Below, in pieces: positions 9,244-57,717 of a stretch of DNA of 64,000 nucleotides (its first letter is position 1; every line of letters starts with the position of its first letter). A program made the position numbers and the translations under genes. The stretch is from Phallusia mammillata (Eukaryota): positions 5,952,001 through 6,016,000 of the forward strand of contig OZ281500.1 in NCBI GenBank assembly GCA_965637545.1, given 5' to 3'. Under the pieces are notes generated by a model. The model was not told where the DNA came from, did not search any database, and saw only the letters and a program-made list of their open reading frames with translations.

Positions 9244-21130
<11,887 letters not shown>

Positions 21131-22087: not shown

Positions 22088-25000
22088 TCACGCATTCACA
22101 GCCCTGTACACACAGGACATGTCCCGGTCGCCGAATCCAATCGCCTTTGTGCGCTTGTACAACTGAAAAACATCGGGAATGATATACATATATGTCAAGC
22201 CTGTCATGGAATTTGTGGTCCACGAAAAAGCTTGTGGTGTCCCAACCCCTGTATAGGTTGTTAAATGTTGAAACCAGCTTGTGGGAAGACTTGAAGGCGC
22301 GATTTGCTATGGTATTTTAGGCCAGAGAATTGAATTCAAACATTGCCTAAGCCGTAAGTCAATCCCAGCAATCCAAACGGGAATACCCCGCCTAATACCT
22401 AATTTGACCAACTTAAGCCAACCAGGTTGTGTAATAAAAGCGTCTTATACACACACGCATAGCAACACACGGTAAAAGTCACACAGTAGTATATGTCGGC
22501 CGCTCACCGCATCATAACATACCAGTTCTCTATTTTTACCGCAAATGTCCCTGGAAACAACGGGGTCACCTAGGCAGCAACAATAGGCGATTACCAAAAT
22601 TGGACGACTTACGTCACCGACGTACAACCGTTGGTCGAACAATAGCAATCACCTGGTGCGTCTATTTGAGGGTTTGAGGGTTTAATGGCCCAAATTGATG
22701 CCAAGGCACTGTGTGTTCAACAAATGACGAGATTCATGGCGAGTAAGCACAACTTTTAATGCGTCTCGTTTTTACAACCTTGTACCGTCCTAACGCAAAT
22801 ACTTGAACTAAACCATTAAAAGTGATCTGCTGGGCGTGTTTAACACGTGGAAAATGGTTGGTTTACCGACCCAGGGCAACCAAAAAAGCAAATGCTTACT
22901 GCATATTGCCCAAAACAGCTCTAAAGTCTAACTCTAAACCACAGGAAGTATAACATAGACTACCAGTAATATGCTGTTAAATTTGCAGGTATATCAAGCA
23001 TAAGCTTTAAACTTTTTGACACACTTGATTACTGTATTGCCAATTGTTGTAACATAAGTAATCTAATCCAGCTTAAATTCACCATCGGGTCCACCACACT
23101 GATTTGTAGGATAGTGGAATAATAATACCCACTTTATATCGACACCACTATGCTTAAATTGTAGTTATACATTTTGGGAGATCACAGCATATTACTGAAA
23201 TACACAATTAACACTGATTTTGTTCAACAGTATTGCTTATTGTTGTGGTACATCAAGAAAATTGCCATAATGTTGTATGTGTTTCATTTCAGTTATGTTA
23301 CCATGTGTTACATCAGATTTTGGTATTTTTACAAAAGAAATTTGCCAAATTTTTGAAGTAAATATTAGATTAAAACAGTGAAGTAAAAAAAATAGGGTTC
23401 ACAATTGAAACATTACATTTTTTAGGCAATTGACCAGGGTGTGGTTTGGCAAATGCATGTTTTCCAGCTAACCTGGTTCACACAGCACTTTGTTGGAAAT
23501 TAAGTGTTCAGACAAAAATTTTAATATACAAGTTTTAAAATCTACATTTTTCATGTGAAGTTTTTGTTTTCTCATCAGAAATTATAAAGAAAAAAATCTT
23601 TTTTTCTAACTTAACCCAGAGATATACATCATCAAACATCTTGACAATGCCCATTCGAGCATTTTATTTACACTTGGCCACAAAACTGATCATTTGTGTG
23701 CTTTTAAGATATAAATCAGTAAATATGTAATTAGGAACCATAAATGCTAATGGGTAGACAAACATGGTGTTAACATGCTTGCAAATCTATTTAACATTCA
23801 AATTACAGTAGAATGCCATTCACCATTCAGTATAAATTGTTGTGTAAAATACAGTAAACCTTTGTTAAACCGGATCTTCACCTGATTCAGACAAAACTTA
23901 AAGTATAAAGGATTTATAATGGCAAGCCTTTAACCGGGAAGAAAGTTTAAGACCTAAGGCAAGGAATTTACTTATTTTGTACATGTGGTTTGTAAATATA
24001 TAACCTGTAAAGTTGATAAAGACCAAATTTAAAATGCTCTTCGTATGGTTTAGCATCATACTTTGTGGAATATTGGGAAGAATGCAAAAGTTTTAAATGG
24101 TTAAGCTAGGAATTCGCCGATAAAGGTTGGGAACCACTGCTTAAACTAGGCAATTTTTTTGTTCCAAACAGGTCTAGATTAACCAACGTTTACTGTACAG
24201 AACTTTATTGTGATGTAAATTAATAAGCACACAACGGTAAATACCTCATTGGCTGCTCCAGCAACATGAAGAGGTTGTTCCAATACTTCACCCATCTGTA
24301 AGGCAAGTCGAAGGTCTTTCTGCTGATGTTTCAATGGGAAGTTTGCTGGAAAATGGCCCTGTGCAAACAAATCATCAAATATTATTTGTCTAATTTTTCA
24401 CAACCAGTGAGAATATATTTCTATGATAAAAGCATAGAGAAACAAAAAAAATCAACAAAAGTTGTTCACTACTCCATCCTTGCTTGAAAACAAGCCTATC
24501 AGTTTTGCCACCTTGACACCATAAATGCCTTTTGTGAATCTATTTTATTGAAAAATTTTGGTAAAATTGCATGTAAATGTATGTGAGGAAATTCTACAAA
24601 CTAAGCCAATGGACATGTAGTTGGGCCTGATCCTTTAAAATACACAAAGAATTCTTTATTGTTTTCGAGTTATGACCAACCAAACTTTTGCTAAAGATGA
24701 TGATCCAAAACCAGTCTTTATCTCATTGCACAAGGCTATTGGCAAAGGTGGTCTTACAATCAAAACTTTATGTGAAACAGAATTACGTGATGCTGGCTGC
24801 TACCTGGTAATTATATTGGCAAGTTTTAGTCATCCTGCTTTTTCAAAGTACAACAGAGATTTATTTGTTTTACATTTTTTTTTAGTATTCCTGCAGCAAT
24901 TGCATGAAAAACTTCACCAACAGTCCCTTACATGCTCTTTATCCGTGTAGAGGATCCTGTGCCCTACTTTACTTCTTAAAGTGGTCCAAATTAAAAAAAT

Positions 25001-28000
25001 TTAAAAGTATTATTGATTCTCCAAAAGACTAGCAAACATTCAGTCATTTGTTTTTGTCACCCACTCAATAGTTTCTGCTTGATGTATAAAATCTTCTGCT
25101 GTGTATTGTGTGGTAATTTGTAAACATTTTGGAGGCTCCCTGCAATGTTGTGCAATGCGACATGCAGTACTAAACAGGCTCCCATGCCTGCTGTACATGA
25201 ACTAAGCGGAAAACATATTTAAGGGGGATTTCAGAAAGGACTTTGGTGCAAGGAAAGCAAACCTTGTGAATATACTTTTTCCAAACACTAAATATCATGA
25301 CATGAAATGATATATTACCTCCAGTATTGCTGATCCTTTGGTTTGTACGAGGGGACAAGAAATGGCACTGAGATTAAGAACATCGAGTAGGGTGTACTGG
25401 TCAAGGCCAGCTTTTTCTGCAAGTGACAATCCTTCAGCCAGGGATGCCATGAATGTGCCAGTTAGCATGTTGACAATCAGTTTGGTGTTTGCCCCACATC
25501 CAAGTTCCCCTGTGCAAATAAAGATTTTAAAGCTTTTATTTGATCAAAAAAATGGGAAGTTTTTCAGTTCAATGTCATATAACAAGTTACTGATAATGAC
25601 AGTTACATAAAATTTGATCGCTTTCCCAAAAAGACAGTTAATTTTAGGGATGGGCCAAGCCGAGCCAGAACCAAAAAATTGAGTACCGAGCACCCCAATT
25701 TTTAATGCTCGGTGCTGAGCAGTCACATGAACTAAGCCGAGCGTTAGACAAAGAATAATGTCAACCTTGAAAGAAGTTTTTGAAACAAAAATATGCTTTG
25801 AACCATCCCACCCATGCGCAACCTATGTGCCAGTGAGAATTGTTGAAACAAAACATGCATTTTTAAGTAGTTGATGTTGTTACACAAAAACATAGGTGTT
25901 TCACTTAGCGTTGGCTTGCCTCACCTGTCATACAGAAGCGATTTTTGAAGTTTAGGTATGACCCTGGTGTCCAAATAAGGGACTTAAAAAAAATACAGTG
26001 TAATTGGGTATGTTTGTGACGTCACAATACACCAAGCACCGATCATTAACAAGTCATGCTCGGTGCTCGACCAAACAGAACACTTGCTGTTTTGGTCCAT
26101 CCCTAGTTATTTTAACAGGCAAAGACCTATTTTTTGGTGTTTTCTGGAAAACCTTTCTGGAAACTTTTTTTTTGTAAAACCACATTTCTGTTCTCAAAAA
26201 ATATTTATAGAATAAACACTGATGTTAAGTAAGTTTGAATTAAAGTTAAAAAATAGTCCTAACCTTTTTTAACCATCAAGCATTTATGTATCAAAACTAG
26301 TAATAACAATGAATGTGTTCCAGTATATTAATGTTACATAAATGCTGGAACTACAGGTTTTACTCTTTGAAACTAAAAATTGCCAATCGCAGATTGAAAA
26401 AGGCTGAGTTTGAGCTTTTGCACATCATTATACAACGTACAATATTGGACTTCGATGGCAGACTTGAGGTTTTTCCTCAGACATGGACTTGTGGTTTTGG
26501 CAAACAGGCCTGGTTTTATTTAGTTAAGTTAATGTTTTGACTAATCTGCTGTGAATTATTTAAATGACAAAAGTATAAAATTGAAATATTTTTATTTATT
26601 GCTTGATTTGGGGTTAACTGATGCAAAATGGAAAAATCTTGATTTTGTGGTTAAAAGTTTAAAACAGATGAAATATCCAGATTGTAGTTGAACACCAAAC
26701 ATATCTTTAATGTTGATACAAAAAAAAAACATTTAAAGAAAAAGGAAAAGTGATAAGAATCACACATTTTTTTTGCTTTGTGGCTGATTGTAGGGGGCAT
26801 TAAAATGTTTCAACTAGAAGGGTGGCTTAGCACATACACTATGATCTATTTTAAAACATAAATATATTTCCTATGTTTGTTTTGTATTGGGTCCCATATT
26901 AGCCATCGTCTTTTATAACCTTGGTTGTTTCTGCAAGCAACAACTCATGGGTCCCCACACATGCAAAGTTGTAGATAATGCATTTCAATAGGTAACAATG
27001 AGTAAGTTTGGTATTGTGAAGACAAACACAGTGATTGGTACTGTGCATATCTAAATATGCTATATGGAGTAAAAACTATTTAAATTGAAAAACTCATTTT
27101 AGGGGGCTAGCATCAAACATTTGATCGAAAAACGAGTCGGACAAACTTCGGGGTAAAATACCCCTTTTAGGGGGCTAGCGGGGTAAATACTGGGGTTATC
27201 AACAAAAACAAAGTGGGATGCACATGTACATAACTACATCTACCATCTGTATAAGTTTCAGCCACATCCATCAAGCATTTGATGGCAAAACAAGTCAGAC
27301 AAACTTCGGGGAAAAAAAAACATTTTAGGGGGCTAGCGGGGTAAATACTGGGGTTATCAACAAAAACGAAGTGGGATGCACATGTACATAACTACATCTA
27401 CCATCTGTATAAGTTTCAGCCACATCCATTAAGCATTTGATGGCAAAACAAGTCAGACAAACTTCGGGGAAAAAAAAACATTTTAGGGGGCTAGTGGGGT
27501 AAATACTGGGGTTATCAACAAAAACAAAGTGGGATGCACATCTACATAACTACATCTACCATCTGTGTAAATTTCCGCCAAATCCATTAAACATTTGATA
27601 GAAAAATGAGTCGGACAAACTTCGGGGAAAAAAAACATTTTAGGGGGCTAGCGGGGTAAATACTGGGGTTATCAACAAAAACCAAGTGGGATACACATCT
27701 ACATAACTATGAGTCGGACAAACTTCAGGGAAAAAAACATTTTAGGGGGCTAGCGGGGTAAATAATGGGGTTATCAACAAAAACCAAGTGGGATGCACAT
27801 CTACATAACTACATCTACTATCTGTGTAAATTTCAGCCAAATCCATCAAGGATTTGATGGAAAAACGAGTCGGACAAACTTTGGGGAGAAGAAAAAAAAC
27901 ACAAACATTTCGAGTAAAATCAATATGTGTCCCCTTCAGGGAAGGGGACCCATAATTATTTCAATATTGCAATTTTCCAGTTGCGATACAAAGGCTTTTT

Positions 28001-31000
28001 TCACCGATTTACTTGTTGAACTACTGCTTATCCCCTTAACAACAATTTTACAAATGGCTAAGCAAAAAAGATTAGAGTTTTTTGTTTTTAAAACCATACC
28101 TAGAAAGAAGGTCTTCTTTCCCATTGCTTCAAAGCACGAATATCCGTCCATGTACAGGGAGCGGTCTCCAGCAGCTAAAATCACGAGTTGTCCTGTCTCT
28201 GCTGCTTTTTTGCTTCCAGATACAGGAGCTTCGAGAAAACGACCTCCTCGCATGGAAATAGCCTTCAAAAGCACAATTTTTTAATGAGATATCAAAACTA
28301 TCAGTATCCCAAAACTGTTTGTCAAAAAGAAGATTGGTCAGAAACCTTAAAACTTAACATGAAAGTCATTTACAGCTTAAAGGTTTTCACAGGAATTGGT
28401 TTGATTCTGCTAAAAAAGGGATTTTAAACATACAGAAATGACACAGACAGAGCCAAATGCATTTTTAGTGATTTTAATTTAGACAAAGTAAATTTAAAAA
28501 AATTATCCAAAACAACAAATCACCAGAATAATTTCTGTGTGACTTTGTCAAACAATACCTCTGAAATTTCTTTTATAGTGTCATTGTCGACAGTGGACAT
28601 CTCCACATAACCTTTCCCTGATGTTATACCTTGCAAAACTCCACTGTTGCCTATCACCAACTAAAATACAAACAGGACCAAGAAAATTATTTTTTCTAAA
28701 ATGCACCAGCAATATTTTTTACCTTGTCCAAACTTGGCATAAGTTTAACATTTTTATTTTTTTAAATGGTTGAAGAGTTTAATGTGAAAACTGTACAATT
28801 TAAAAATTTTCACTGTAAAAAACAAAATTGTTTTTTGAATACAATATTTGGTCTTTAATTGGTTGACTCTGCTAAGGTACATTTTACAAAAAAGATCATG
28901 TTACAAATTTAACAAACTTACATCTCGGACAGCAGTTGAATCGGAAACACATGAAAATGTGATGTCACATTGTTGTACTACATCAGCTGGGGATGTCCCT
29001 TCTTTTGCACCAGCAGATAAAAGTTGCTTGCACCTAAATATAAAAAAGGTTTAAAATTGTTGAATATGTATTTTTATTTTCACAGCTTTGTAAAGCATAA
29101 ACACATGGGTCTCCAAGAACACATAATTGCTGATTTTGACAAGATGGTTATATCAAATGCCGATAAAATAAATGTCATTTATTTCTTACAAATAGCATTT
29201 TTTTTAAATGTTTGGAAAGTCAACCTTTTGCTAAAATGGAGTGCACAACGATTATCACCATTCAATGTATTTTTAAAATGTAAAAACGCAAAATGAATAT
29301 AACAAAAAAATAAATTTATTTTGTGTGTTTTGTTTAAGTGATGACCATATTTGAGGATTAAAAGTTCTGTGTTTGCTACAACTGCATAATTTTTTTTTGA
29401 AATTTTTTTACAAAAGAACAAAAACAAAATGTGTAAGTTTTCACACAGCAGATAAATTTTGCCATATAAATCATCGCTTTCAACTAAAAAAAGTTGTGTG
29501 CAAACTTTTGCATGATTTGAAAGCATTTTTTTATTCTATAACTTAATATGTTACTTGTTTTGGTTTCTGTTCCACACAGTAACATCATGTCCACTCTTGA
29601 TCAAATTCATTGCCATCGGAATCCCCATGATTCCAAGACCCAAGAATCCAATTCTAACAAAAATAAGTATTTTTTTTATAAACACTGCTATATTTCCACA
29701 GTCAGCAACCATGTACCAACAGGTGATTTTGAGGTAAAGTTTCATGACATGACAATTTACCATACTTTTTAAAATAATTCAAAATAATACATTGCTGGTT
29801 TTCAGTAACTTGTTATGATGTAGGTTATAAAAACCAGGCTACACACATGATTCTGCCTCCATTCTCATCGATTTTAAATCTACTGACACCAAACTGTTAG
29901 CATGCCATGTCATTATCATTTAAAATTTTCAATAAATTTGCCTTTCGTTGCCTACCCCTGTTTTGAAAATATCGCCACGAAGTAACTATTTTAATGCAAA
30001 TTTTGCAAGCAATTTTTAGGAATATTTGTTTTTCATTATTATTTACTTCATCACTTCACCATGTTTTCACAAATTAACTGGTGACAAAAAAAAGAAAAAA
30101 AGAAATTTGCAAAACAAGGCACCACAGAAAAAAAGATTACTATTTACTTCTTATCTGTGGGGATGACGTCTTTTGCAACAATACTTGTGGTGCTGTCGGC
30201 ATCCGCTGTCGTATCAGGTGAAACACATGGTTCGGTTAAGTTGAGGTTGTCTACTGAAGATACATGGACCTGCAAATAGGTGTGGCGAAATAAGACAAGG
30301 TGAAAATTAAAAACAAGGTGAAACAAACATTTAATACTACATGTATGCACACCTCATGCAAAAGTGTTAAGCAGAAAAGAAATGTCAAGCTTACAAAATT
30401 GTTAGTATTATTGCATCAATCACATTTTTTCACAAATATTTTTTATTGTTTTGAAATCAGGAAAAAATACAAACAATTTTTTTGAGAAAAATTAAAAATT
30501 TAGAGATGGTTTTTATTAACCACAAAAATGGCACTTGCCAGTTTTACTATTTATAATGCCCCAAAAAACCCTTTAGCAAACTCAAATACTATTTGGAGCA
30601 TCAATGGCATAAGGTTGACACTTCAAAATTGAAATTGAGACTAAAACTAAAGACAGTATTTATTGAAAGTAGTATCAGTTCAATGATAATGTTTTTAAAA
30701 AATTAGTTGCTCACGCTGACAGCTTATTAGTTCAGATTTAAAAGTGTTCAATTGCAATTATCATATGGATGTTAAACTACGAAAGCAATTGTCAGGTGCC
30801 AATCTTAATGCTGTAAGGCAAGCTACGTTTAAACTATATAAGATTTTGTTGGAACAATTTTTGGTTGCATATTTTCATGGTAATACTTGTTGCAAAAGCG
30901 TAGCACGGACACACATGAACATGCAAGCCACACACTTGCATTACGGTCAGTTGATGGGGAAATTAGTTACTCACTGGGTTAGCAGATGGAGGGATTGCAT

Positions 31001-34000
31001 TCTGTCTTTGTGTGAGCAGATAATGCGACATGTTCTGATGCTTGAGAGTTAGCTGTCAGACGTGGGCAAGAGGTAAATATTCAAAGTTGGATTTCACTTA
31101 TAATGGACAAGGCATATTAACATGTGTCTTTTAGCAAAGATCTACGTTTTATGAGCAACGGGATAGGAATTGCAATGGTGATAGTTAGGATGATGCAAGA
31201 TGTTTAGTAAAATTGTACAAATGCATAAATGAAAAAGTGGTCAATTCTACTACATTACAGGTGCACTTACCTCTTCTCTGGTTGGAAGACTTTTCTTGGC
31301 AGATTTTCTACGTTTCTTTGGTGGTGTGCCAGATGCAGTCTAAAAGTAAAGACGATTTTACTTTATTTACCAAAAAAAAACTACTTTAGAAGACAAAAAG
31401 TTGGGTTTGGCATTGCCTAACATATTCTGCACATTACATGATATGGTAAAAAGTCAAGAGTCCACTAGTAAAAATCACTTTTCTCACAAAAAGTAACATC
31501 AACAGAAAGACCCTTGTAAATTTTACACAACTTACAGCTGAAGATGATTTTTCGTGCTTAGCTTTCTTAGCAAGAGGTTGGTCATCACTTCCCTCTGACT
31601 CTTCCTCAGATTCCTCATCACTTGTGTCAGGGAGTCCTAAAAAATAAATTGATTTAATGCATCACATTACGGTAGAACTGTAAAAAACATTCCCACACAT
31701 GCAGGGGCGTATCCAGAAATTTTTAAAAGGGGGGTGCAACAATTTTTTTGGGGGAAATCCCTAATGACGTCATTATGATGTCACACGTTGTTCAAAACGG
31801 CGCGTTATGCGGCAAAGCACTTTTTCCAAAATTGGCGGTTTCTCTATCTAATTGACAGGAAGAACAGGTAAATTTAGCGAAAGCTTTGTAGTTTTCTGAT
31901 TTCGCCGCTGCTATCTAGCTTACACAGCCAAACTGCAGCTGCAAAATAAGCGTGACTGTCAGGTAATCAAAATCGTTGCTTAAAAAAACAGGGTCCAATT
32001 TCTAAAGAACTAAATCTCTTGCTGAAACGGTAACCCTACTGTTAAGTTGCGCAAAGTCACGAATGCACTAAAGGTGGTAACTGCAGAAGGCATAAATTGT
32101 GCCTGGCAAGTAACAAATTACCCTAATAACATAACTCGATTTACATCAATCTAATGTTTTTGACAAACTATTACGTGTTTGGCGGATCAAAGCAACACAA
32201 CATTACACGTTTTTAACACTTTTACATTGTTCAAATGCAAAAACAGTTTGATATGTTGCACTTAGTGCAGTTACCACTAAGCAAGAAACTGCTACCAGCG
32301 TCCTAGCCGGAACGTAACTTTCCCATTGTTAGCGCATAAACCTCCTTAAAAACCTCCAGATAACAAGCGAATACAAGAGATTGAAGGCTCGCATCTTTGA
32401 GATAACGACTCCCTGTTATCACGCAGTGGTAAACGGAACGATTTTGGCCTATTTAATGTACGAAATGCAGTGGTTCTCAACTGGTGGCACCCTTGCCACT
32501 AGTGGTACACCACAGCTTTTAAGGTGGTAAGCGAGTAGCTTTCTGCTGCAACTAACTCAAGATCATGAAATGCAATACAACTGACCCAACTGAGAACCAC
32601 TGGTCTACATAAACGCTTCAGGACTGATCCTTATTAAATGCATACATGCAATAATTAATTTATTGCATTTACAAACATACTGAAGTGGCCATTTCGATTT
32701 TTGTATACAATTTTTGCTCATAAAGGCATGTTTGTCACAGTTGGTACAGCCTGATTATGTCCACTGAAAAATATGTGGGTTTGCATATGTACAATGGAAT
32801 GAGATTTGCTTTTTACCACATGGTATCATGCATGATTGTGCGTTATTTAGCGCTATCCCTTTTAAAGTAACAAGCAGTGAGGGTCACTGGTACAACCTTG
32901 TATACAAGATGTCATCTGTGTCCTAGGTGTTCGAACTACTTGCAAGAAGAGATAAAATGTATGAAAGCTCTTGCAAAACTAACAGGATAATCATTGGGTT
33001 GATGGTAAAACCAAACAGATAACATATATATATACATGTAACCGGGTATATTCAGCCAAATCTAGTTATTTGCACAATCTGTTTAATAGGAAGTGTAAAT
33101 CCCAACAGTAACCATTTGTCTGAAAATTTTTTTATTGCATAAAAAGTTGTTTAATAGGTTATGCAATTAACTGGATTCATTTGTATGTGTGAAAGAAAGC
33201 CTACATGTAGGACAGGAATCGAAAATTACCTTTGGCTCTTCTCTCCACTGCATGGTCAATCTGTCGCACAGCTTCAAGAAAACCTTTTGCTTTGCCGATG
33301 GCATACTTCTGCTTTTGCTCCGCATAATCATGTACAAGATCAGCCTTTGTCCAAGCACTAAAATTATAATTTCAATACTTTACCTTGGCTAAAAATGTGT
33401 AAAAAATCTAGAAACTAGTCAGAATTTGAACCTTGTACATTAAAAGGTTTACAAGTCAATTTCATCATGTTGCAATAACAAATCTCGCAAAAAAAATCTC
33501 AAAAAAAAATCTCTAAAAAGGGGCAGTGGTACTAAATACTGCATGTGGCCGCATGTTATCACACGACAGGAAGTTGCAAAGGACTTGCTTTTACAAAAAT
33601 ATAATTTTGCGGACTTTTAAAAGCGCTAACGGTTAGAGCTCTCCGGGTTGGGTGAGGGTTTGTAAATAAAAGTACACTAGAATCTGGTTTATTTCACCCT
33701 TGCTGGGCTTGTATTACCACATTCCACATACAATGCAGTATTTTAAGCAGAATAACATGTAGTATTTAGTACCGCTTATTTGTAAAAAACAACACATTTT
33801 TATGAGCTAAATGAAAAAGCAACACGTTTGTATGTAGCATATTTAGCTTTGTGAGAATGTCAGCGAGGCAAAAAAAAAGAAAATTTGATCAAAACGTTCT
33901 TACTAATCGCCTGTTCCATAGAAGCGAATGAAAAACATCTCCACCTTCTTGCTTGGTTTTTTAACATCCTTGTCCGGTTCCGCTACCTGTAAATGATTAG

Positions 34001-34270
34001 ATTGGTCAATTTAAAAAAAAGTGATTTAGGAATAATGCATACGTTACACACCTTTCCTGGCCAGTATGGATATCCCGTCATTTTTGCCCTGTCAATAAAA
34101 AAATATTTAACACCACAAAATGATAATTGTTGTTTAGAATTGAATCATGAAATGTAAAGTTATTAGGTGATTATTAAATGCTAGGCCAAATATAACAAAA
34201 AACAACCAAATAAGAAAAAAGTTTTATAGTAAAATTACCACACAAAGTCTCCCACTTGAAAATTCGCCAT
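22088..34270 (-). CDS. GLYR1: GLYR1/NPAC/NP60: PWWP domain + beta-hydroxyacid (glyoxylate/succinic semialdehyde reductase-like) dehydrogenase, about 475 aa
   Basis: 14 exons: 34270-34239, 34088-34052, 33926-33844, 33357-33230, 31636-31536, 31339-31271, 30269-30148, 29653-29555, 29033-28922, 28660-28559, 28262-28100, 25509-25319, 24358-24245, 22162-22088 (1428 nt, in frame). PWWP: [18 protein letters not shown]...[13 protein letters not shown]. Rossmann fold: [10 protein letters not shown]...VTVWNR. Also [45 protein letters not shown], ending [11 protein letters not shown]. Confidence 0.95.
25645..26105. mobile_element. hAT-type MITE, 461 bp, in a GLYR1 intron
   Basis: TIRs TAGGGATGGGCCAA / TTGGTCCATCCCTA. 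Flanks GTTAATTT / GTTATTTT form an 8-bp TSD with 1 mismatch. Repeated subterminal CCGAGC/GCTCGG motifs. Confidence 0.8.
26812..27956 (+). mobile_element. Non-autonomous Helentron/HINE-like element carrying an internal tandem array
   Basis: Begins AACTAGA. Short subterminal inverted motif CACATA (about 26831) / TATGTG (about 27924). 3' GC-rich hairpin GTCCCCTTC-AGG-GAAGGGGAC (27929-27949) followed by CCATAAT. No TSD seen. The class assignment is inferred from this architecture. Confidence 0.55.
27097..27900. repeat. Tandem array, 158-bp unit, about 5 copies
   Basis: The GACAAACTT anchor occurs at 27140, 27298, 27456, 27614, 27717 and 27873 (periods 158, 158, 158, 103, 156). Units share TTTTAGGGGGCTAGCGGGGTAAATACTGGGGTTATCAACAAAAAC. 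Confidence 0.95.
32468..32602. mobile_element. Small Charlie-like MITE, 135 bp
   Basis: 12-bp perfect TIR CAGTGGTTCTCA / TGAGAACCACTG. No TSD found. Confidence 0.6.
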
Positions 34271-41500: not shown

Positions 41501-44500
41501 AACTGAAGCGTAAAGTCAACTTTGACCGCGCCTTGATCACTCCTAAACACGAGGAAGGTACAGCCCTCGCTGAAGCCGCTGAAACCAACCTCCAAAGGAG
41601 GCTTCGAATGTTCACCCATCTAAGGTAAGCATTATAAACCCTAGTTTAAAACACTGATTTTTATGCATATTGTAATTGCCCCCCAATGCGAATTGAAAAA
41701 GCAGACGGATGCTGAATGGCAATATCCATTTATTACATAATATTTTTTTAGTAAATTGTGTACTGTATCACGAACATCGCTTATTATAGGTGCTAGAGCA
41801 AAAGTCTGATTTATAATGCGAATTTATTTAAATGGCTTGTAATAGAAACTTAAAATGTTTTATCGGTTGAGCTCTTTGTATTTACACAGCGTAATTGGCC
41901 AAACAGCACACTTGTAATTCTGTTATATTATGTAATTAATTATTGTGTCTAAAAGATAAGTTGATGACCTAATTTGCCATCCACGAAGACTTACAGTGTG
42001 TCAATGACCAGTTACCACCCATTGTCATTTTACACATCGCAAAAATTACCTATAGTACCTTACGTAATATGCGTTTTATTACGCAACGCCTCGTAACAAG
42101 TGCTTTGCATTACAGGCAAGATTTAGAGCGCGTGCGCAACCTGTGTTACATGATCGGTCGACGTGAAAAGACGAAACGATCGTCAGTGAAAAATATGGAA
42201 AGCGTTTTCCTTACACAGGTTTGTACAAACTCAAGTTTCAGTTCCAGTACTTTGTGCATTATAAAAAGCAAATACCTCGACAATATTAGGTTATTTGGGG
42301 AATTTACTTTGTAGCCGTGGTTCCTATATCATTTTTCGGCGAACTTCTTTCATTTGAATTTTTTTTATACTTCCCCTATAGACTAAATAGTAGATGCTAA
42401 ACCATACAAAAACAAAATTGCGTATTTTGTCAACTTTACAGGTTATATTCTCAAAGAGTCTATTTACAAACCACATGTAAAAATTAAAGTAATTTTCTCC
42501 CCTAAAGTTTTAAAATCCCTGCCTTGAAAGGAATTTCTTCACGGTTGGGAAACACTTGCTTACAATTTGTTTCACAATGTAGATGAAGCTGCTGGAAAGG
42601 CGAATGTGCCATGACACCACTTTCAACACACAGCGTATGGCGAACAACCTGACCAAGTTCGGTAAACCCGAAGTTTGCGAGCTGGCAAAGAAGGAGTGGA
42701 AATTTCTTTCCAAGCACCCTGAGTGGATGCCAATGGACGTACTGGCGGACAAGGCCCCTGCAGACACCAGAGACAGTACAAACACTGAGTTAAAAGCACA
42801 AGTTGATACCAGCACCATACCTCCGGCATCTGACCATAAGGTGGCGCCAGATGTCAATAAACTTCCCACTTCGCGGCATAAGAATGGACTCCACCGTAAG
42901 GCGTTCTTAACCGCCTGCCAACGGCGCGAATCATTAGGCCTGAAGCGCGCACCAACGCAGACTGAGACACCAGAGGTCGCCCAAGAGGTTACAAAGCCGC
43001 GTGCCGAGACGAGAAAGCGAAGTTTGCGCTCAAATTCCGATTCAGACTTTGAGAGTGAAAACAAAGTCCCGTTTTCGCCAACTGACACACGGTTAAGCAA
43101 GCGCACAAAGACTTGGTCAGTATGGAGGACAAAAGCCGCTGGTGTTTCGCCCTCTGCCTTTACCGTGAAAACCGAAAAGGTTGAAGAGGAAAAAACGCCG
43201 GATAGCAAAAGCCGAACATCTCGCCATCGCCCTTCGCGTCTAGGCACACGGGCAAGCAGCATTACTGACAATGAGCGTTCAGCGCAGTTAAGTGACAGTG
43301 CCTTGCCCAATGCGACTGTTAAACCGCCCAAGCCTGATCTGGTGATCAAGTGGGATTCGGATAAGGTTGATGAACCGGAGATGACCACACAGAAGGGAAA
43401 AAATTCACTGCCTAATGGACAAGTTCCAAAATGCACCAAACCCGACAGCAGTAAGATATTAGTTGTATATATGCCATACATTTTTTTTTAAATAGACAAT
43501 CTTTGTAACAAACCACAATTTTTTGTGCTTTGCAATTCACACATGTACGTCCTGAAGGTTATTTTAACTTTTGTTTCGCCCATGTAGCTACCAGACTTGT
43601 TTTAAGTATCCGCTTTTATGACACAAAACATGTAATTTTTAGATGGCAATGCGAAACATACCGTCCAATCCCGTAAACCTATCTCCGCTGTGAAGAGCTC
43701 CCCGGGAAGTGTAGAGACGAGAAGCACATCACAGAAGATCGGGAGGAGGTTGCCCGGTCGCAGAGCAGCAGCCGAGGCAAAAAACGTGCCAGGAGCTCTT
43801 GCTCAATCATGTGACAGTGACGTGAGCGCCGAGGATCACAAGGCGAGCGTGTCACGTGAGCAAGGGCTCCGCAAATCTCACACGTCACCTCGCAAGGACC
43901 AAGGAGGCTCGGAGAAGGAAGTGCTTGTCGATAAGAAGAACATCCCAAGGCCTAGATTGCGTTCAGGAAAACGGGATGATGATGAAGATGGAGGTTACCG
44001 TGGTGACATGGACGAATCTGACTCTGAAACTTTGGGGGCATCACCCAGCCGACACAAGCACCCACATCCTGCAAGCAAACGGGTATCACATGCTATGCAG
44101 AAGCGTTCAGCGCGAAAGCACTCCGACACCGCCGACTCGAGTGATTACAAATCTCTAAACGAATATGACAAGACCTCGATGGCCAAAAGGAGGCGTTTAC
44201 GTTCTCTGCATAGACTGCAGAAGCCGGACGCATGCGAGGTGCGCTTCAAGGGTTACAAGGACGTCCTGGATGACCCTCAGGCGACTCCTCCGTCCCGTTT
44301 GTCGGGTCAAGCAGCGTCCAGTGAAATGACACTGCAGAGTGACACTACGAATGACCAGAGTCATCGGTGGTCAAAAAACGAGTCGGCCGTCGGCGATGCT
44401 TGCGATGAGGATGTAGCTGTTGATGAGCAGCGATCAATCGCCGGCGGCCCAACCCTGTCCACCAGCAATGCTGCTCATCCACCCAGCTACACTCCTGCCG

Positions 44501-47419
44501 GTTCCAACCAAGGATACCAAGTCCCAATGTCTTTTTACAATCCACCGCCGGGATACTATCCTAACAGTCAGGTCGTGCTGCCTCCCGACATATACTATTC
44601 CAACGTATATTCGCGCAGTGGCTGGACGCTTACGCCAAAGCAAAAGTCGATATATGCACAACAGTTTGCTGCCCAGGCTCTCCACCAGGCGGCGCTGCAA
44701 CATTCAGCACAGACCGCCGCGTCACTGCCTCCCGACAACTCGTCGCCACCGCTCCCTGACTCCACTCTCTCGCCGGAAAGCAACCAAATACCGAACTCAA
44801 TCGCGACTCAAGCTTCTTTAAATCCTTCCTTTGACCCTCAAAACCCATTAGTAATGAACACAGTGGCGCAAAATTCGCAGGAGCAGGGTTTTAGTGGTGC
44901 TTCGGTTTCACAAACGCAAGTTCAATATCAAGATAGCCAACCCCCGCCTGGTGAAGAGTCACCCGTATCTAGGAAATCGCACAAAAAGAAGAAGAGCAAA
45001 AAGTCAAAGAGGAAGAAAAAGAAGAAACGGAAGCGCAGAGAGTCGATGATGAGTGCCCAAAAATCTAACACCGCCTCCGAAGCTCAAAGCGGGAGCTCGG
45101 ATGAATACTGCGTAGAATACTGCTCAGTCCTTCCTAACCCAGTCGAGGACGAAACGGCGGCAACACCCACTTCAGAAGAAAGTCCCGCCCACGTTTCAGA
45201 CAATGACGACGTTCCAGTGGCCAACGTGCCCTCGCGGGAAGTGGAACTTAGCCAAAGCGGCAACGACACTCTCAACGCCAGTAATACCTCCGCAAACACG
45301 GGCAGCTTCGTATCCTCGGAACAAGCGTCTCCTGTAAAGCAAGGTGGACTTTTGTTAAAAATCGATCGCAAACGCCTTATTGTGACTCAGGAAAGCGAGA
45401 GTGAAGACGAAAGCGAATCCAGCGCGGCGTCCTCGTCAGGCAATGAAAGCGGCACACTCGCGGATTCTTCAAACAAAACTGCACCATACGTTTCACCGCT
45501 TAAACTTAAATTAAGTATTCAGAAGAGCGACCGGGCACTGAGAAGCGGCCTCATGCCGCGTTGTTATGAAATCCTGGGCGAAGACAACCCACCGCTGGAT
45601 GGCGAACGTGAGTCAGACAACGAGTCGCAATCTCTAATAAACACAACTGAAAAAACTGAACGGCCCACTAGAGCCCAAGCTGCATTACGCCGTCTTGGTC
45701 TTCTTAGCGACGACGCCAAGCCTCAGCAGCCAGAGAAGCGTGCCGTTTTGCGAATTCCCACTGTGTCCAACTCCTCACCTACACGAATTACTGCCCCCGC
45801 CAATGATCCCCCTGCTTTACCTGTGCCTCGCCGTAAGCGTGGGCGACCGAGAAAAACAGTGGCCCCAAAACATGAGGTGGAAAGCAAAGCATCAGTAGAA
45901 CACAGCACACCAGTTGCAGTTACGACAACCAGAAGTGCCTCTACTGATACGCGCGGCACCTTTACGTCTAACGTCCACGCGACGCCGCCCCATCGAGTAA
46001 GAAGCCATAGTGACGTCATACTGCCTGACGTGACGTCACCAGTCGGTGGCGGGGTGGCACAGCCCGAGCGTCACTGGAAGAAGAGGAAAGTAATTGAACA
46101 CGAAACTTCAGTCACTGTGGAACCGAAGCCACCCCCTGATAACAGTGCTGCAATCGAAAGTTCTGTTGTAAATCCTTCCAGCTCCTCAAATTACACAAGC
46201 CCGACTGAACCTAAGCCTCTGGAAACGCCGACCACAATTTCTAGTGCAAGAGAAATGCCAGGACCTACTCCCCCTAGCGGCGTTCAAAAAATGGACACAG
46301 AAGTAAGCGATATTAAACATTCGCACGAACCAGATGTTCACGAAAATGCGACGAAATGGCCAGAAACCACTGCTAGCCCTGTTACAGTCAAATCTCCGCG
46401 CGTTTCCACTGGCAACGGTAAGTTTTTATATCTTCGAAACAGCGCGTATAAACGTTTGTGTTCACGATTCACGGTTTTAAAGATTCTGACGAGAAACAAA
46501 CAAACCTATATTTTTGTATAGGACATGACGTTTTGACATAAACTTGGGTCATTTTCAAAGGAAATGAATAAAAACCCAAACAGCACCAAAATTCGAACCC
46601 CCTGTACTTATTAAACACCTAACCGTTTTATCTCTTATCGTTTTAATCTCAACGTGGTTTCGCGCTGTTGTCTTGATCCTGCTGATTTTATGTGCTGCTG
46701 GGTTTTTACATTCATGTTAAAATTGTCGCTAAAACTGCTTGAAAACGCACAGATACACAGCAACGGCCGACAAAAGCCAACAGGAGGAAAACGAGCGCGG
46801 ACCAACCTAATGACGCGAGGAAAAGCTCAGGGAAATCATTTCAATCATCGCGCACTGTTGTCGACGGCCTCCCTCCCGTGTCCCCTTACAGGTGTGATTC
46901 AGTTCTTAAGCTCTCTCAATGTAGGCTGCATAAGGTTTAATACAGCAGTTTTGCAAGTCACTTCTTGCTTGTTTAAATAAAAGGGCTTGATTCGGGCCTG
47001 ACTTCCCACTATGTCACATTTGCGTTAAAAATTAAACTCAGTTAATTAAAGTTTTAGACCTAATTTTGGCTTGTGTAAAAGAAATTGAGGTTTGGGCCTG
47101 GGTCTCGGATTTGTACCTCAATTTTAGGCCCGCTTACAGCTCAAAATAAACCTTTGACCCTGTGCTTAAAACGCCCGACCTATTTGCACTGAATATATGA
47201 CCTTTAACCCCTACTTAAAATTTCAGGTTTACCATTGCAAACACGCACCAACAGAAGATGTGCAAGTCGGGCACCCCAGCACCTGGCACTGTTCCTCGGG
47301 ATGCGGCTTTTAACCTCGTCCGAGCAAAGAGAAAACACGAATCGGGTGGCAAACCGGCGGTAAAAAAGACCTCCTCGTCCAAGGACGATCCATATGAGTT
47401 TGCGGATTTTGGGAGCTAG
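35551..47419 (+). CDS. JADE1: JADE family PHD finger protein (EPC-N, PHD-Zn knuckle-PHD) with a very long low-complexity tail, about 1920 aa
   Basis: 16 exons: 35551-35707, 36126-36376, 36639-36755, 36818-36894, 37063-37211, 38112-38260, 38450-38533, 38602-38796, 39388-39575, 40436-40574, 41440-41624, 42116-42218, 42583-43450, 43643-46417, 46753-46891, 47227-47419. Hallmarks: [111 protein letters not shown]. Likely a pro-ortholog of JADE1/2/3. The start codon is tentative. Confidence 0.93.
37637..38035 (+). mobile_element. hAT-type MITE, 399 bp, copy 1 (JADE intron)
   Basis: 12-bp TIR TAGTGATGGGAC / GTCCCATCACTA and a perfect 8-bp TSD TCAGAGAG. Clustered GATACCGAGTAC subterminal repeats. Confidence 0.95.
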
Positions 47420-54536: not shown

Positions 54537-55472
54537 TTATTCGGCATTGTCCAGCCTTGTGTGTCTGATCACACCACAGTGACCCAGCAAAAAGTCCTGG
54601 TTAGCATGCATCCAAACGCCAACATACAGTAGTATTGGTAGAGAAAACACAAGTGCAGCTATTTCCCATATTTCACCTTGATCTTTTTGTGCAACAGAGC
54701 ACTTAAATTTTTGTCCCCAATCTAGCCTTGTATAATTCATAGAATCAATGAGATCACTGCACAGTTTGTTTTCTTTTTCCACTGTTTCATAATAGTCATT
54801 TGCCTCGCAGTATAGCTTTACGCAAAAACTGCAAACCGTTTGGTTGGGATCTTGGGTAACTAAACCTGGTACGACCCCCTGGCCAAAGTCACTGAAACAC
54901 GAAAGTGTGTTTTCAATCATTGCCAACAACTTTTTTGTGCTTTCTGCTGGCTTGTATATCTGTGTGTCATTACTTTCCGTGACATCGAAACATTGATCAC
55001 ATTTTGATTTGTCCCATATGTATAAGATGAAATTATAAGTTGCCAGTACAACCTGTACATTGTCAGCTCGTAAAATTTGCCTTTTGCAGTTACTTGATTC
55101 ATTCTTTCCTTCATTGTTGAAGATGATCTTGTAAACATTGTTTACTGACATGTATTCTGACACACAGTTTTCGCAGTAATGCAGTGGCCGTGCATTAGCA
55201 ACAGTGCAGTTAATAAACTTTGCTGTAGCATTGCTAAACTGTTCCAAATACCTCATACAGTCTGGTGAGACAGATCCAGTCATGATATCTTTGTCGCAAT
55301 TTTTTTTAGACCAGCATTCACGCCGGTAGCTTTTCTCATTTCCACTGCTTCCTACAAGTGTACCTTCAACCCATTGTGAAGAGGAAGTATTGGTTTCTGT
55401 TGCACTTGCAAACGATTGTGATAATCTAAGCAGAGATAACAGGCAAAATAAACTGAAATTCAAGATATCCAT
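54537..55472 (-). CDS. OSTM1: Osteopetrosis-associated transmembrane protein 1 (CLC-7 beta subunit), 311 aa, intronless CDS
   Basis: Single ORF with a signal peptide and a Cys-rich, N-glycosylated luminal domain (NARPLHYCENC, LRADNVQVV, IWDKSKCDQC, LCSDLIDSMNYTRLDWGQKFKCS). One C-terminal TM helix. Confidence 0.92.
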   Translation of the reverse strand: MDILNFSLFCLLSLLRLSQSFASATETNTSSSQWVEGTLVGSSGNEKSYRRECWSKKNCDKDIMTGSVSPDCMRYLEQFSNATAKFINCTVANARPLHYCENCVSEYMSVNNVYKIIFNNEGKNESSNCKRQILRADNVQVVLATYNFILYIWDKSKCDQCFDVTESNDTQIYKPAESTKKLLAMIENTLSCFSDFGQGVVPGLVTQDPNQTVCSFCVKLYCEANDYYETVEKENKLCSDLIDSMNYTRLDWGQKFKCSVAQKDQGEIWEIAALVFSLPILLYVGVWMHANQDFLLGHCGVIRHTRLDNAE

Positions 55473-55962: not shown

Positions 55963-57717
55963 TTAATTACAATCTTCCCATGTCGTTGGTGCAACTTGAA
56001 GGAGTTTTTGAAGCACCAGAGTTATCTTGTCAAGTCCATTGCATTCACGCCACTTGTATGCAAAAAAGTAATACACAATGGGCGAGGCAAGCAAAAACGC
56101 GAGAGAATACAAAATTAGAACATCTGGTTTGTAAACGAGAGGCGCAACAAGGAGGTAGCAACAAATGACGACGGCTAAAACCGGAACAGGAATCGGAATC
56201 TATAAAATAAAGTAGCTGGTAGTTTACCATTTGTTTTTAGCCTACATGATCTCGTATCGAACCTTAAATGGTCGTTTCATCGTAGGACGAGTGATTCTCA
56301 TGACCAAAATGCTAGCTATGGAAAGAGCTAGAAAGATCCACTTACTAAAGCTAAAAGCATTAATCAGTGAATTAAAGTCGTTTGGAAGCAGATAAATCAG
56401 CCCCGTCAACGTCGTAAAAATTAACGCCGGAGTTGGCGTGTGGTAATGAATGTCAGCCATTTCAAATATCTGTGAAAAGTATCAGAAGTAGCATGCTTAA
56501 ATCAACCTTTTCTGCGCAACATTACATTAAATCAGCCCAACCTTGGGAAGCTGACCACGCCTGGCCGCCGCCAGTGGAATTCGACCTGCTGCAATGACCG
56601 TTCCATTCAGGGAACCAGCAATTGACAAACAAACAGATACCGGTATAATCCAAGCAACAGGACCAAGCACACGTGATGCCCACGTTACTGCGACTGCGTT
56701 GCTTTGTAAAATCTCCTCAGGGGTAAGAACTGAAACGTGCAAATAGGTTTAACGAGGCAAATGAAACCTTACGATCAACTGTACGTTCAATACCTACCTG
56801 CAAAATAAGAGATGTTTACCATTATATAAAACATTGTCACTAAAGGCACTGCGATTAAGATGGCTCTTGGTATGGTTTTATGCGAATCTTTTACTTCTTC
56901 TGCAAGAGTGTTTAACCCGTTCCATCCATCATAAGCCCACAGGCCTTGATAAAATGCCAGGCCAACTTCGGAAAAGCCTATACCGACCAAGTCTTCTTTA
57001 CGAAAAGCGTTGCTGAAGTTATTTGTTCCTACTTGGTCACCCTGGCACAAACGGACGATTCCTCCAACTATTATTACAGCCATTCCCACAAACTTTGCCC
57101 AAGTGAGAATTTCTTGCAGTTTTGATGCAAATTTTAGACTTACGCAATTGACGATAGTAAGAAGTAAAAGTAGACTAGCCGCGATAGCCTGAAAATAGAC
57201 AAGTGTCGTATGTCTTATTTGTACCAACCTATTGTAACTAACAAAAACAATTTACTAATACCTTGGAAAAATATCTCGATGGTTTACAAGTGCTGGGATA
57301 GAATGATTCAACAGCGTAATCTCCAAAAGTTAACGCCAACGCAGCTATAGCAGTTCCCATGGAAATTAGGCAAGTGCACCACACATAAGAGAAAGCTAGC
57401 CAGGGTCCACACCCTGCATGTATATAAGTGTAGGTCCCACCTGAAATGCTAAAGCAAGACCCAAGCTCACAGTAACAAAGGGCGCCCACCATAGCTATGA
57501 CACCACAGCCGGCCCACACGACAAGGCTGAGACCTACACTGTTGTTGGATCCAGCTAAAACCCCAGTCGGGGAGACGAATATTCCAGAACCAACCATAAT
57601 TCCTGCAATGACTGCTACACTTCCGGCAAGTCCAATCTCTCGGCGCAGTAGAAATTCTTTGTTCTGAGTTCGAGTACTTTTCCCGATTTGGCTGCGATTG
57701 GTCTTAATTGCTTGCAT
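55963..57717 (-). CDS. SLC7A9: SLC7 heteromeric amino acid transporter light chain, b(0,+)AT-like, about 492 aa
   Basis: 5 exons: 57717-57262, 57188-56798, 56729-56542, 56469-56263, 56199-55963. Motifs GIMVGSGIFVSPTGVL, GALCYCELG, FYQGLWAYDGWN and RPFKIP. The TM3-4 loop Cys (FYPSTCKP) used for the heavy-chain disulfide is retained. The exact paralog assignment needs a tree. Confidence 0.85.

What the first reader, a model, noticed from the sequence alone, without database searches (positions are those of the whole stretch)
24245..28262. Chromatin-reader GLYR1/NPAC with an apparently intact, plant-GLYR-like catalytic site
Seen: [15 protein letters not shown] with Lys codon AAA at 25483-25481, plus [13 protein letters not shown] and [10 protein letters not shown]. 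Established (recalled): plant glyoxylate/succinic semialdehyde reductases have GAKMKLIVNM (catalytic Lys170, Asn174), VSGSKKPAE and [10 protein letters not shown] (Phe231). Human NPAC has AKMMLIVNM (Met in place of the Lys), VSGNQQ and FYLKYIQKD, and is regarded as catalytically inert. Inference: this protein may be an active NAD(P)H-dependent aldehyde reductase tethered to H3K36me3 nucleosomes by its PWWP. That would be an ancestral metabolic-enzyme/chromatin-reader state coupling local redox or aldehyde detoxification to transcribed chromatin.
Basis: partly seen in the sequence, partly recalled or inferred. Interest (0 to 1): 0.72.

Follow-up and report, generated by a model that had tools for sequence, protein, structure and literature searches.

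The report
Sea-squirt NPAC keeps its catalytic lysine
This is the ordinary sea-squirt (Phallusia mammillata) copy of the chromatin reader GLYR1/NPAC/NDF; unlike the inactive human protein it keeps every residue that plant and bacterial glyoxylate reductases need for catalysis, but so do most invertebrate copies outside the arthropod lineage, and activity is untested.

Summary

The AAA codon at 25483-25481 is Lys385. It aligns without gaps to the catalytic Lys170 of Arabidopsis GLYR1 and to Met437 of human NPAC. All six residues shown by mutagenesis to matter in AtGLYR1 are present. Transcript contigs from four studies confirm the splicing.

In 130 full-length PWWP-GLYR1 proteins the position is:
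- Lys in tunicates, amphioxus, an echinoderm, a hemichordate, molluscs and a nemertean;
- Met in jawed vertebrates;
- Ala in lampreys;
- Asn in ecdysozoans.

Lys is therefore the ancestral, widespread state, lost at least twice, and not a peculiarity of this gene. Phallusia does have one of the most complete plant-like sites in the sample. Many other Lys-keeping lineages have replaced the substrate-binding Ser.

Catalysis remains an inference. I found no assay of any Lys-bearing animal NPAC. Interest is moderate: this is a clean, testable enzyme-to-pseudoenzyme case.

The parts
22091..34270 (-). Whole coding region of the Phallusia mammillata GLYR1/NPAC/NDF orthologue: 15 coding exons, 501 aa, stop TGA at 22090-22088
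   Evidence: An exon-by-exon check against P0152 gives exactly one tiling, with all introns GT-AG. tblastn of P0152 is 100% identical within the exons.
33230..34270 (-). Exons 1-4 (34270-34239, 34088-34052, 33986-33904, 33357-33230) encoding the PWWP domain (aa 1-94; motif [12 protein letters not shown])
   Evidence: Pfam PF00855, E=2.4e-17, residues 7-87. Best solved relatives are the LEDGF/HDGF PWWP domains, E=1.5e-14.
30148..31636 (-). Exons 5-8 (31636-31536, 31339-31271, 31052-30975, 30269-30148): acidic/basic disordered linker with a KKRRK patch (aa 135-139)
   Evidence: No Pfam domain in this stretch.
31008..31025 (-). HYLLTQ motif (aa 160-165) in exon 7. It resembles amniote HFHHFLLSQ, the stretch I recall as the LSD2-binding peptide of human NPAC.
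   Evidence: A pattern search across orthologue linkers found H[FY]LL[ST] only in Phallusia, Clavelina, Styela and amniotes. The link to LSD2 is inference.
29555..29653 (-). Exon 9: Rossmann dinucleotide-binding motif GFLGLGIMG and WNRN
   Evidence: PF03446. Aligned to 3PDU, 3DOJ and 2UYY.
28922..29033 (-). Exon 10 of the dehydrogenase domain
28559..28660 (-). Exon 11. Thr310 (codon 28594-28592) is the equivalent of AtGLYR1 Thr95, in EMSTVD.
   Evidence: Alignment to 3DOJ chain residue 116.
28100..28262 (-). Exon 12. Ser336 (codon 28220-28218) is the equivalent of AtGLYR1 Ser121, in PVSGSKK.
   Evidence: Alignment to 3DOJ chain residue 142. The splice joint is seen in RNA contigs.
25319..25509 (-). 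Exon 13. Lys385 (AAA, 25483-25481) is the equivalent of Lys170 and Asn389 (25471-25469) of Asn174.
   Evidence: Aligned to Lys in 3DOJ, 3PEF and 3PDU and to Met in 2UYY. Both flanking splice joints are seen in four studies.
24245..24358 (-). Exon 14. Phe446 (24340-24338) is the equivalent of Phe231 and Asp454 (24316-24314) of Asp239, in [10 protein letters not shown].
22091..22162 (-). Exon 15, the C-terminal helix ([24 protein letters not shown])
   Evidence: The loose end of the RNA contigs at 24245 continues into this exon.

Best explanation
The region holds three exons of the single-copy Phallusia mammillata orthologue of GLYR1/NPAC/NDF.

Domain layout (shown):
- An N-terminal PWWP domain. 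By homology with LEDGF and human NPAC it should dock on H3K36me3 nucleosomes of transcribed genes.
- A disordered linker of about 120 residues. It has a basic patch and an H-Y-L-L-T motif like the vertebrate LSD2-binding peptide.
- A C-terminal beta-hydroxyacid dehydrogenase domain.

Catalytic site (shown): the dehydrogenase domain keeps the ancestral, complete GLYR-type site. This comprises the Rossmann motif, Thr310, Ser336-Gly-Ser-Lys-Lys, Lys385, Asn389, Phe446 and Asp454.

Most likely mechanism (inferred): the domain still binds NADPH and can reduce small 2- or 4-oxo acids or aldehydes such as glyoxylate or succinic semialdehyde. Lys385 would act as the general acid. The protein would then be both a chromatin reader/elongation factor and a competent reductase.

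Evolutionary context (shown): this is the ancestral state of the PWWP-GLYR fusion, and tunicates simply retain it. The Lys was replaced in vertebrates (Met in gnathostomes, Ala in lampreys) and independently in ecdysozoans (Asn).

Still inferred, not shown: H3K36me3 binding, catalysis, and any role of catalysis on chromatin.
For: Identity:
- The exons tile P0152 (UniProt A0A6F9DDX8, Phallusia mammillata N-PAC) exactly.
- Pfam finds PWWP plus NAD_binding_2 plus NAD_binding_11.
- The gene is single copy in its own genome.
- It is transcribed and spliced as modelled in contigs from four studies.

Catalytic site:
- Gap-free alignments place K385 on AtGLYR1 K170 and on the Geobacter enzymes' Lys, where human has Met.
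- The other five residues named by Hoover et al. 2013, as cited in PMC5399074, are also present.
- The 10-position pattern TSSKKKNFHD is identical to a plant GLYR. Only one other of 130 PWWP-fused proteins shares it.

Fold:
- The AF2 model has pLDDT 95.7.
- TM-scores are 0.96-0.98 to 2UYY (57% identity), 3PDU (53%), and 3PEF and 3DOJ (50%). The domain is therefore almost as close to active bacterial and plant enzymes as to human NPAC.

Conservation:
- All six residues are also kept in Ciona, Clavelina, a holothurian and the very fast-evolving Oikopleura.
- The Phallusia terminal branch is short, 0.065.

Distribution of the Lys position: K 34, M 84, A 7, N 5, with taxon labels.
Against: - No enzymatic data exist for any Lys-bearing animal NPAC.
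- The domain has been kept for hundreds of millions of years in two lineages that lost the Lys. Its conserved core role is therefore non-catalytic: tetramer scaffold and cofactor binding (PMC13144531).
- Five of the six residues are also conserved in inactive human NPAC, so their presence is weak evidence for catalysis.
- Ser121 is replaced in amphioxus (I), a hemichordate (L), molluscs (V/C), a nemertean (V) and Styela (N) even though Lys is kept. This suggests relaxed constraint on the substrate pocket in the fused protein.
- A nuclear, chromatin-bound location is an odd place for glyoxylate or succinic semialdehyde metabolism.
- In human NPAC, M437K breaks the oligomer, so the residue also has a structural role.
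Confidence: 0.55

Rival explanations
1. Scaffold or sensor only. The tunicate dehydrogenase domain, like the human one, serves as an NAD(P)H-binding oligomerisation module for the reader/elongation factor. The Lys and its neighbours persist because they also shape the cofactor pocket and the domain interface, or through slow drift, not because any substrate is turned over in vivo.
For: - The domain is retained after Lys loss in vertebrates and ecdysozoans.
- T, S, N, F and D are kept in inactive human NPAC.
- Ser121 is repeatedly lost in Lys-keeping lineages.
- Human M437K disrupts assembly, so this position matters structurally (PMC13144531).
- All biochemical functions known for NDF (nucleosome destabilisation, Pol II binding, LSD2 stimulation) are non-catalytic.
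Against: - The full ten-position plant pattern, including the SGSKK loop that vertebrates changed to S/N-Q-Q, is kept in Phallusia. It is nearly complete in Ciona, Clavelina and Oikopleura despite the fast evolution of tunicates.
- Long branches at the vertebrate and arthropod stems coincide with Lys loss, as expected for a functional shift rather than drift.
- No other GLYR-type gene was found in the genome.
Confidence: 0.4
2. Two products from one gene. The catalytic function belongs to a PWWP-less isoform, made from an internal promoter or trans-splice acceptor, that acts as a free cytosolic GLYR. The full-length nuclear protein acts only as a reader.
For: - Ascidian genes are often trans-spliced. 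Earlier notes on this genome report operons (s1-358934).
- The gene is the only GLYR-type locus found.
- Cnidarian homologues are said to lack the PWWP (PMC3457860).
Against: - The transcript contigs laid on the window are 1.3-1.9 kb and run on upstream of exon 12, into exon 11.
- No PWWP-less Phallusia protein appeared among the hits.
- I had no reads-level data to look for internal 5' ends.
Confidence: 0.04
3. Artefact or decaying copy. The apparent intact site would belong to a pseudogene, an assembly chimera or a contaminant.
For: None found.
Against: - There are 15 exons with canonical splice sites and an uninterrupted frame.
- Identical spliced mRNA contigs occur in 16 runs from four studies.
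- The product is identical to an independently deposited transcript-derived UniProt entry.
- The closest relatives are other tunicates.
Confidence: 0.01

Closest known systems
Human GLYR1/NPAC/NDF (PDB 2UYY dehydrogenase domain)
   Same: - Same architecture: PWWP, linker and beta-hydroxyacid dehydrogenase.
- 57% identity and TM 0.98 over the dehydrogenase domain.
- Orthologous by best hits and by tree.
- The linker motif H-[FY]-L-L-[ST] is shared with amniotes.
   Different: - Human has Met437 where Phallusia has Lys385, and SGNQQ rather than SGSKK.
- Human has FYLKYIQKD rather than FPLKHQQKD.
- Human is reported to be catalytically inert.
- Human has an AT-hook. No RGRP-type AT-hook was found in Phallusia, only KKRRK.
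[quoted passage not shown]
   Same: - 50% identity, TM 0.97 and a gap-free alignment.
- All six catalytic and substrate-binding residues, and the SGSKK and FPLKHQQKD motifs, are identical.
   Different: - The plant enzymes are stand-alone cytosolic or organellar proteins without a PWWP or linker (PMC5399074, PMC3457860).
- Activity is demonstrated in plants and untested here.
Geobacter gamma-hydroxybutyrate dehydrogenases / GLYR-like enzymes (PDB 3PDU, 3PEF)
   Same: - 50-53% identity and TM 0.96-0.98.
- Lys, Asn, Ser, Thr, Phe and Asp are all aligned.
   Different: These are bacterial stand-alone enzymes with no chromatin module.
Drosophila NDF (CG4747) and other ecdysozoan orthologues
   Same: A PWWP plus dehydrogenase architecture and a gene-body elongation factor.
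   Different: - The ecdysozoans sampled here (bee, horseshoe crab, scorpion, priapulid) carry Asn at the Lys position and have changed Thr95, Ser121 and Phe231. Drosophila itself was not examined here.
- Fei et al. state that the LSD2-binding region is absent in the fly.

Membership tests
Beta-hydroxyacid dehydrogenase (HIBADH-type) superfamily | N-terminal Rossmann domain with a GxGxMGxxM dinucleotide-binding motif | tested here: met
   GFLGLGIMG at residues 219-227. PF03446, E=2.4e-44.
Beta-hydroxyacid dehydrogenase (HIBADH-type) superfamily | C-terminal all-alpha domain (NAD_binding_11) and the overall two-domain fold | tested here: met
   PF14833, E=3.6e-24. AF2 model pLDDT 95.7. TM 0.96-0.98 to four solved family members.
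Beta-hydroxyacid dehydrogenase (HIBADH-type) superfamily | Catalytic Lys and the Asn four residues later | tested here: met
   K385 and N389 align to K170 and N174 of AtGLYR1.
GLYR (glyoxylate/succinic semialdehyde reductase; plant GLYR1/2, Geobacter GHBDH) | Six residues important for catalysis and substrate binding: Thr95, Ser121, Lys170, Asn174, Phe231, Asp239 (Hoover et al. 2013, via PMC5399074) | tested here: met
   T310, S336, K385, N389, F446 and D454.
GLYR (glyoxylate/succinic semialdehyde reductase; plant GLYR1/2, Geobacter GHBDH) | NADPH-dependent reduction of glyoxylate or succinic semialdehyde | not testable with these tools
   Needs an enzyme assay. No published assay of a Lys-bearing animal orthologue was found.
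GLYR (glyoxylate/succinic semialdehyde reductase; plant GLYR1/2, Geobacter GHBDH) | Stand-alone enzyme architecture | tested here: not met
   An N-terminal PWWP plus a linker of about 120 residues precede the domain.
GLYR1/NPAC/NDF chromatin reader | N-terminal PWWP fused to a C-terminal beta-hydroxyacid dehydrogenase domain | tested here: met
   Pfam architecture.
GLYR1/NPAC/NDF chromatin reader | Orthology to animal NPAC | tested here: met
   The best hits are tunicate N-PAC proteins, followed by mollusc and vertebrate ones. Tunicate sequences group together (90/84) inside the animal NPAC group (93/84). Single copy in the genome.
GLYR1/NPAC/NDF chromatin reader | H3K36me3 binding through the aromatic cage of the PWWP | tested here: inconclusive
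   In the alignment to the LEDGF PWWP, Met14, Tyr17 and Trp20 match the LEDGF residues and Tyr46 pairs with a LEDGF Phe. That these are the LEDGF cage residues is my recollection. Binding itself is not testable here.
GLYR1/NPAC/NDF chromatin reader | Catalytically inert domain with a non-Lys residue at the catalytic position, as in the characterised human protein | tested here: not met
   Lys385 is present. This is where the gene departs from the characterised members.
GLYR1/NPAC/NDF chromatin reader | LSD2-binding linker peptide (vertebrate feature) | tested here: inconclusive
   HYLLTQ resembles amniote HFHHFLLSQ by pattern only. A PDB sequence search with the linker found no NPAC peptide chain.

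The most novel reading that the evidence does not exclude
In tunicates, and probably in other Lys-keeping invertebrates, the H3K36me3 reader and Pol II elongation factor NPAC/NDF would be a working NADPH-dependent aldehyde/oxo-acid reductase tethered to transcribed chromatin. Vertebrates and ecdysozoans would then be two independent, datable conversions of a chromatin-bound enzyme into a pseudoenzyme. Phallusia and Ciona would be living representatives of the enzyme-plus-reader state on the branch next to vertebrates.
Probability: 0.3. Interest if true: 0.75.

Novelty: new member of a known kind. Interest (0 to 1): 0.45.

Why it matters
NPAC/NDF is studied only in human, mouse and fly, where the dehydrogenase domain is treated as a dead scaffold. 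The comparison made here gives three things:

- **Timing.** The catalytic Lys disappears on the vertebrate stem, after the split from tunicates, and separately in ecdysozoans.
- **Living intermediates.** Experimentally tractable chordates (Phallusia, Ciona) carry a fully plant-like site.
- **A direct test.** Whether a metabolic enzyme was once active on transcribed chromatin becomes testable by a simple assay with a K385M control.

If the domain is inactive despite the complete site, that is also informative. It would mean the pseudoenzyme state predates loss of the Lys.

Tried and rejected
- I searched this scan's earlier findings near the window and by words. There was nothing on this gene. 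Notes elsewhere in the genome agree that it is Phallusia mammillata.
- Ciona savignyi and C. intestinalis were rejected as the source, at about 76-82% identity. My first estimate of 80% identity to Phallusia was an artefact of HSPs running into introns. Within exons identity is 100%.
- The primary NPAC structure papers (Marabelli 2019, Fang 2013) are not held in the library. I relied on a 2026 review and on the NDF papers for the human data.
- A PDB sequence search with the linker gave no meaningful hit.
- Labelling ten shorter stand-alone homologues to look for cnidarian forms gave only plants, bacteria and unlabelled metagenome proteins.
- A greedy exon-boundary script failed at exon 10. An exhaustive search then gave a single solution.
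- Spliced model: I did not type or assemble a joined coding sequence. Exons were searched by reference. The public protein P0152, shown exon by exon to be the product, served as the reference for whole-protein steps.
- The window has no N runs.
Full report
**What is in the window**

Stop-to-stop translation of the minus strand shows a chain of short open segments. They run from a PWWP-like peptide near 34.1 kb to a C-terminal peptide near 22.1 kb. Pfam assigns the segments to PWWP, NAD_binding_2 and NAD_binding_11.

A phmmer search of 1.8 billion representative proteins with the Lys-bearing exon gave tunicate-like full-length proteins as the best full-length hits. [quoted passage not shown]

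tblastn of P0152 on the window is 100% identical inside every exon. An exhaustive exon-by-exon check gives one solution: 15 coding exons, all GT-AG, ATG at 34270, last codon at 22093-22091, then TGA, 501 aa. I did not build a joined sequence. P0152 served as the reference for the spliced product. Earlier notes of this scan on other windows name the same species.

The gene is single copy. Both the Lys exon and a whole dehydrogenase domain find only this locus in the 240-Mb assembly.

**Expression and splicing**

Sixteen runs hold 10-14% of the sampled words of 24100-28400. The three exons there (468 of 4301 bases) make up about 11%.

I laid contigs from four studies on the stretch. Each gave one contig of 1.3-1.9 kb that joins 24358 to 25319 and 25509 to 28100, with CT..AC ends on the plus strand (GT..AG on the gene's strand). 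Each contig also runs on into exon 15 and exon 11. The runs are only presumed to be RNA, but intron-less contigs of this kind are transcripts. The gene is therefore expressed and spliced as modelled.

**The catalytic site**

Whole-domain alignments to solved structures are gap-free over about 285 residues. The matches are human NPAC 2UYY at E=1e-103, Geobacter sulfurreducens 3PDU at 3e-97, Arabidopsis GLYR1 3DOJ at 1e-90 and G. metallireducens 3PEF at 7e-90.

Lys385 aligns with the Lys of GAKMKLIVNM in 3DOJ. That is chain residue 191, or native Lys170 once the 21-residue tag is subtracted. It also aligns with the Lys of both Geobacter enzymes and with the second Met of AAKMMLIVNM in human.

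PMC5399074, citing Hoover et al. 2013, lists Lys170 and Asn174 as catalytic and Phe231, Asp239, Ser121 and Thr95 as substrate-binding in AtGLYR1. The Phallusia equivalents are all present: K385, N389, F446, D454, S336 and T310.

Human NPAC keeps five of these six and differs at the Lys. It also has SGNQQ for SGSKK and FYLKYIQKD for FPLKHQQKD. The one exception is that the Phe231 equivalent is not lost in human.

An AlphaFold2 model of residues 212-501 has mean pLDDT 95.7. It superposes on 2UYY (TM 0.98, 57% identity), 3PDU (0.97, 53%), 3PEF (0.96-0.97, 50%) and 3DOJ (0.97, 50%). The tunicate domain is thus only slightly closer to the inert human domain than to active bacterial and plant enzymes.

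**How special is it?**

| Residue at the Lys position | Proteins | Taxa |
|---|---|---|
| Lys | 34 | Tunicates (Phallusia, Ciona, Clavelina, Styela, Oikopleura), Branchiostoma, Holothuria, Ptychodera, several bivalves and gastropods, Lineus, some unlabelled |
| Met | 84 | Jawed vertebrates |
| Ala | 7 | Lampreys |
| Asn | 5 | Horseshoe crabs, a bee, a priapulid; a shorter scorpion sequence also has Asn |

Plant and bacterial outgroups have Lys. Lys is therefore ancestral for the fusion and was lost at least twice. In the chordate line the loss falls after the tunicate-vertebrate split.

A maximum-likelihood tree of the dehydrogenase domains shows three things:
- Vertebrates are monophyletic (100/99) and tunicates group together (90/84).
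- The stems where Lys is lost are long: vertebrates 0.25, gnathostomes 0.25, lampreys 0.23, arthropods 0.26.
- The Phallusia tip is short, 0.065.

The deep backbone is unresolved, so the tree says nothing about order among phyla.

Keeping Lys does not mean keeping the site. The residue at the Ser121 position is:
- Ile in amphioxus;
- Leu in Ptychodera;
- Val or Cys in molluscs;
- Val in Lineus;
- Asn in Styela, which also has Ser for Asn174.

Phe231 is Ala in Ptychodera and Cys in Lineus. The complete plant pattern at the ten positions (TSSKKKNFHD) occurs only in Phallusia and one unlabelled protein. Ciona and Clavelina differ at one position. Oikopleura and Holothuria keep all six core residues.

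Tunicates are therefore among the best candidates for a still-active enzyme. The scatter elsewhere shows that the substrate pocket is not uniformly constrained in the fused protein.

**What is known**

The NDF papers and a 2026 review describe the human domain as lacking detectable dehydrogenase activity. They report that Met replaces the conserved Lys, that the domain binds NAD(P)H tightly and forms the tetramer, and that M437K breaks the oligomer.

A 2012 study of PWWP evolution states that cnidarian GLYR homologues lack the PWWP.

The Ciona protein appears only as a line in a proteomics table.

I found no paper that notes Lys retention in invertebrate NPAC or that assays such a protein. The primary structural papers are not in the library, so I cannot exclude a remark there. 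NCBI's automatic names for the Styela, Branchiostoma and Pomacea proteins ("glyoxylate/succinic semialdehyde reductase 1-like") show that the similarity is visible in public annotation.

**Other anatomy**

- **PWWP.** It aligns best with the LEDGF and HDGF PWWP domains. Met14, Tyr17 and Trp20 match the LEDGF residues, and Tyr46 pairs with a LEDGF Phe across a three-residue gap. I recall these as the H3K36me3 cage of LEDGF. The assignment is from memory.
- **Linker.** It has a KKRRK patch but no RGRP AT-hook.
- **Exon 7.** It encodes HYLLTQ. An H-[FY]-L-L-[ST] pattern is found only in Phallusia, Clavelina, Styela and amniotes, where it reads HFHHFLLSQ. The review places the human LSD2-binding dodecapeptide at residues 214-225, and I believe this is that peptide. 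The match is by pattern only.

**Verdict**

The gene is an ordinary, already catalogued orthologue of a known family. The specific point, a complete GLYR-type catalytic site in a chordate NPAC, is real. It is the ancestral condition and, as far as I could search, it has not been discussed or tested.

I put the probability that the recombinant domain is a competent reductase at roughly 0.55. I put the probability that catalysis matters on chromatin at about 0.3.

Noticed in passing
window 27111-27811 (intron 12 of the gene): Tandem array of a 158-bp unit, 3.8 copies at 93% match, plus an overlapping 102-bp period. RNA-derived contigs pile up here at depths up to several thousand, and many fit two places of the stretch. 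The unit therefore belongs to a dispersed repeat family that is abundantly transcribed elsewhere.
   Followed up: partly
window 30975-31052 (exon 7): This 78-bp, phase-0 exon carries the HYLLTQ motif. The listed Ciona intestinalis isoform X2 and several short fish isoforms lack the corresponding segment, so it may be a cassette exon that switches an LSD2-type interaction on or off.
   Followed up: partly
window 42583-46521, plus strand: A GC-rich island (45-53% GC against about 37% around it) holds a 302-aa ORF and a 943-aa ORF on the plus strand. The 943-aa ORF includes a lysine-rich basic run. A 323-aa ORF lies antisense to the first. Identity unknown.
   Followed up: no
window 59298-59918 and 62425-63108, minus strand: Two neighbouring ORFs of 206 and 227 aa encode closely similar multi-pass membrane segments. 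They look like a tandem duplicate of a transporter-like gene.
   Followed up: no
window 17734-19477, plus strand: Exon-sized ORFs with SH3-like peptides (for example ...[25 protein letters not shown]...). They indicate a multi-SH3 gene upstream.
   Followed up: no
window 54537-55472 and 57238-57780, minus strand: A 311-aa cysteine-rich ORF has a hydrophobic N-terminus and a C-terminal hydrophobic stretch. A separate 180-aa ORF resembles the start of an amino-acid permease.
   Followed up: no
related proteins (alignment): Forty-three of the 84 Met-bearing vertebrate proteins also have Ala for the Ser121 equivalent, and most have Tyr for Phe231. Lampreys have Ala at the Lys position and Ser for Phe231. 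Decay of the site therefore continued after the Lys was lost.
   Followed up: partly
PDB hit 3W6Z: The entry title gives this as a solved K170M mutant of an archaeal L-serine 3-dehydrogenase from the same superfamily. That is the same Lys-to-Met change that nature made in gnathostome NPAC.
   Followed up: no
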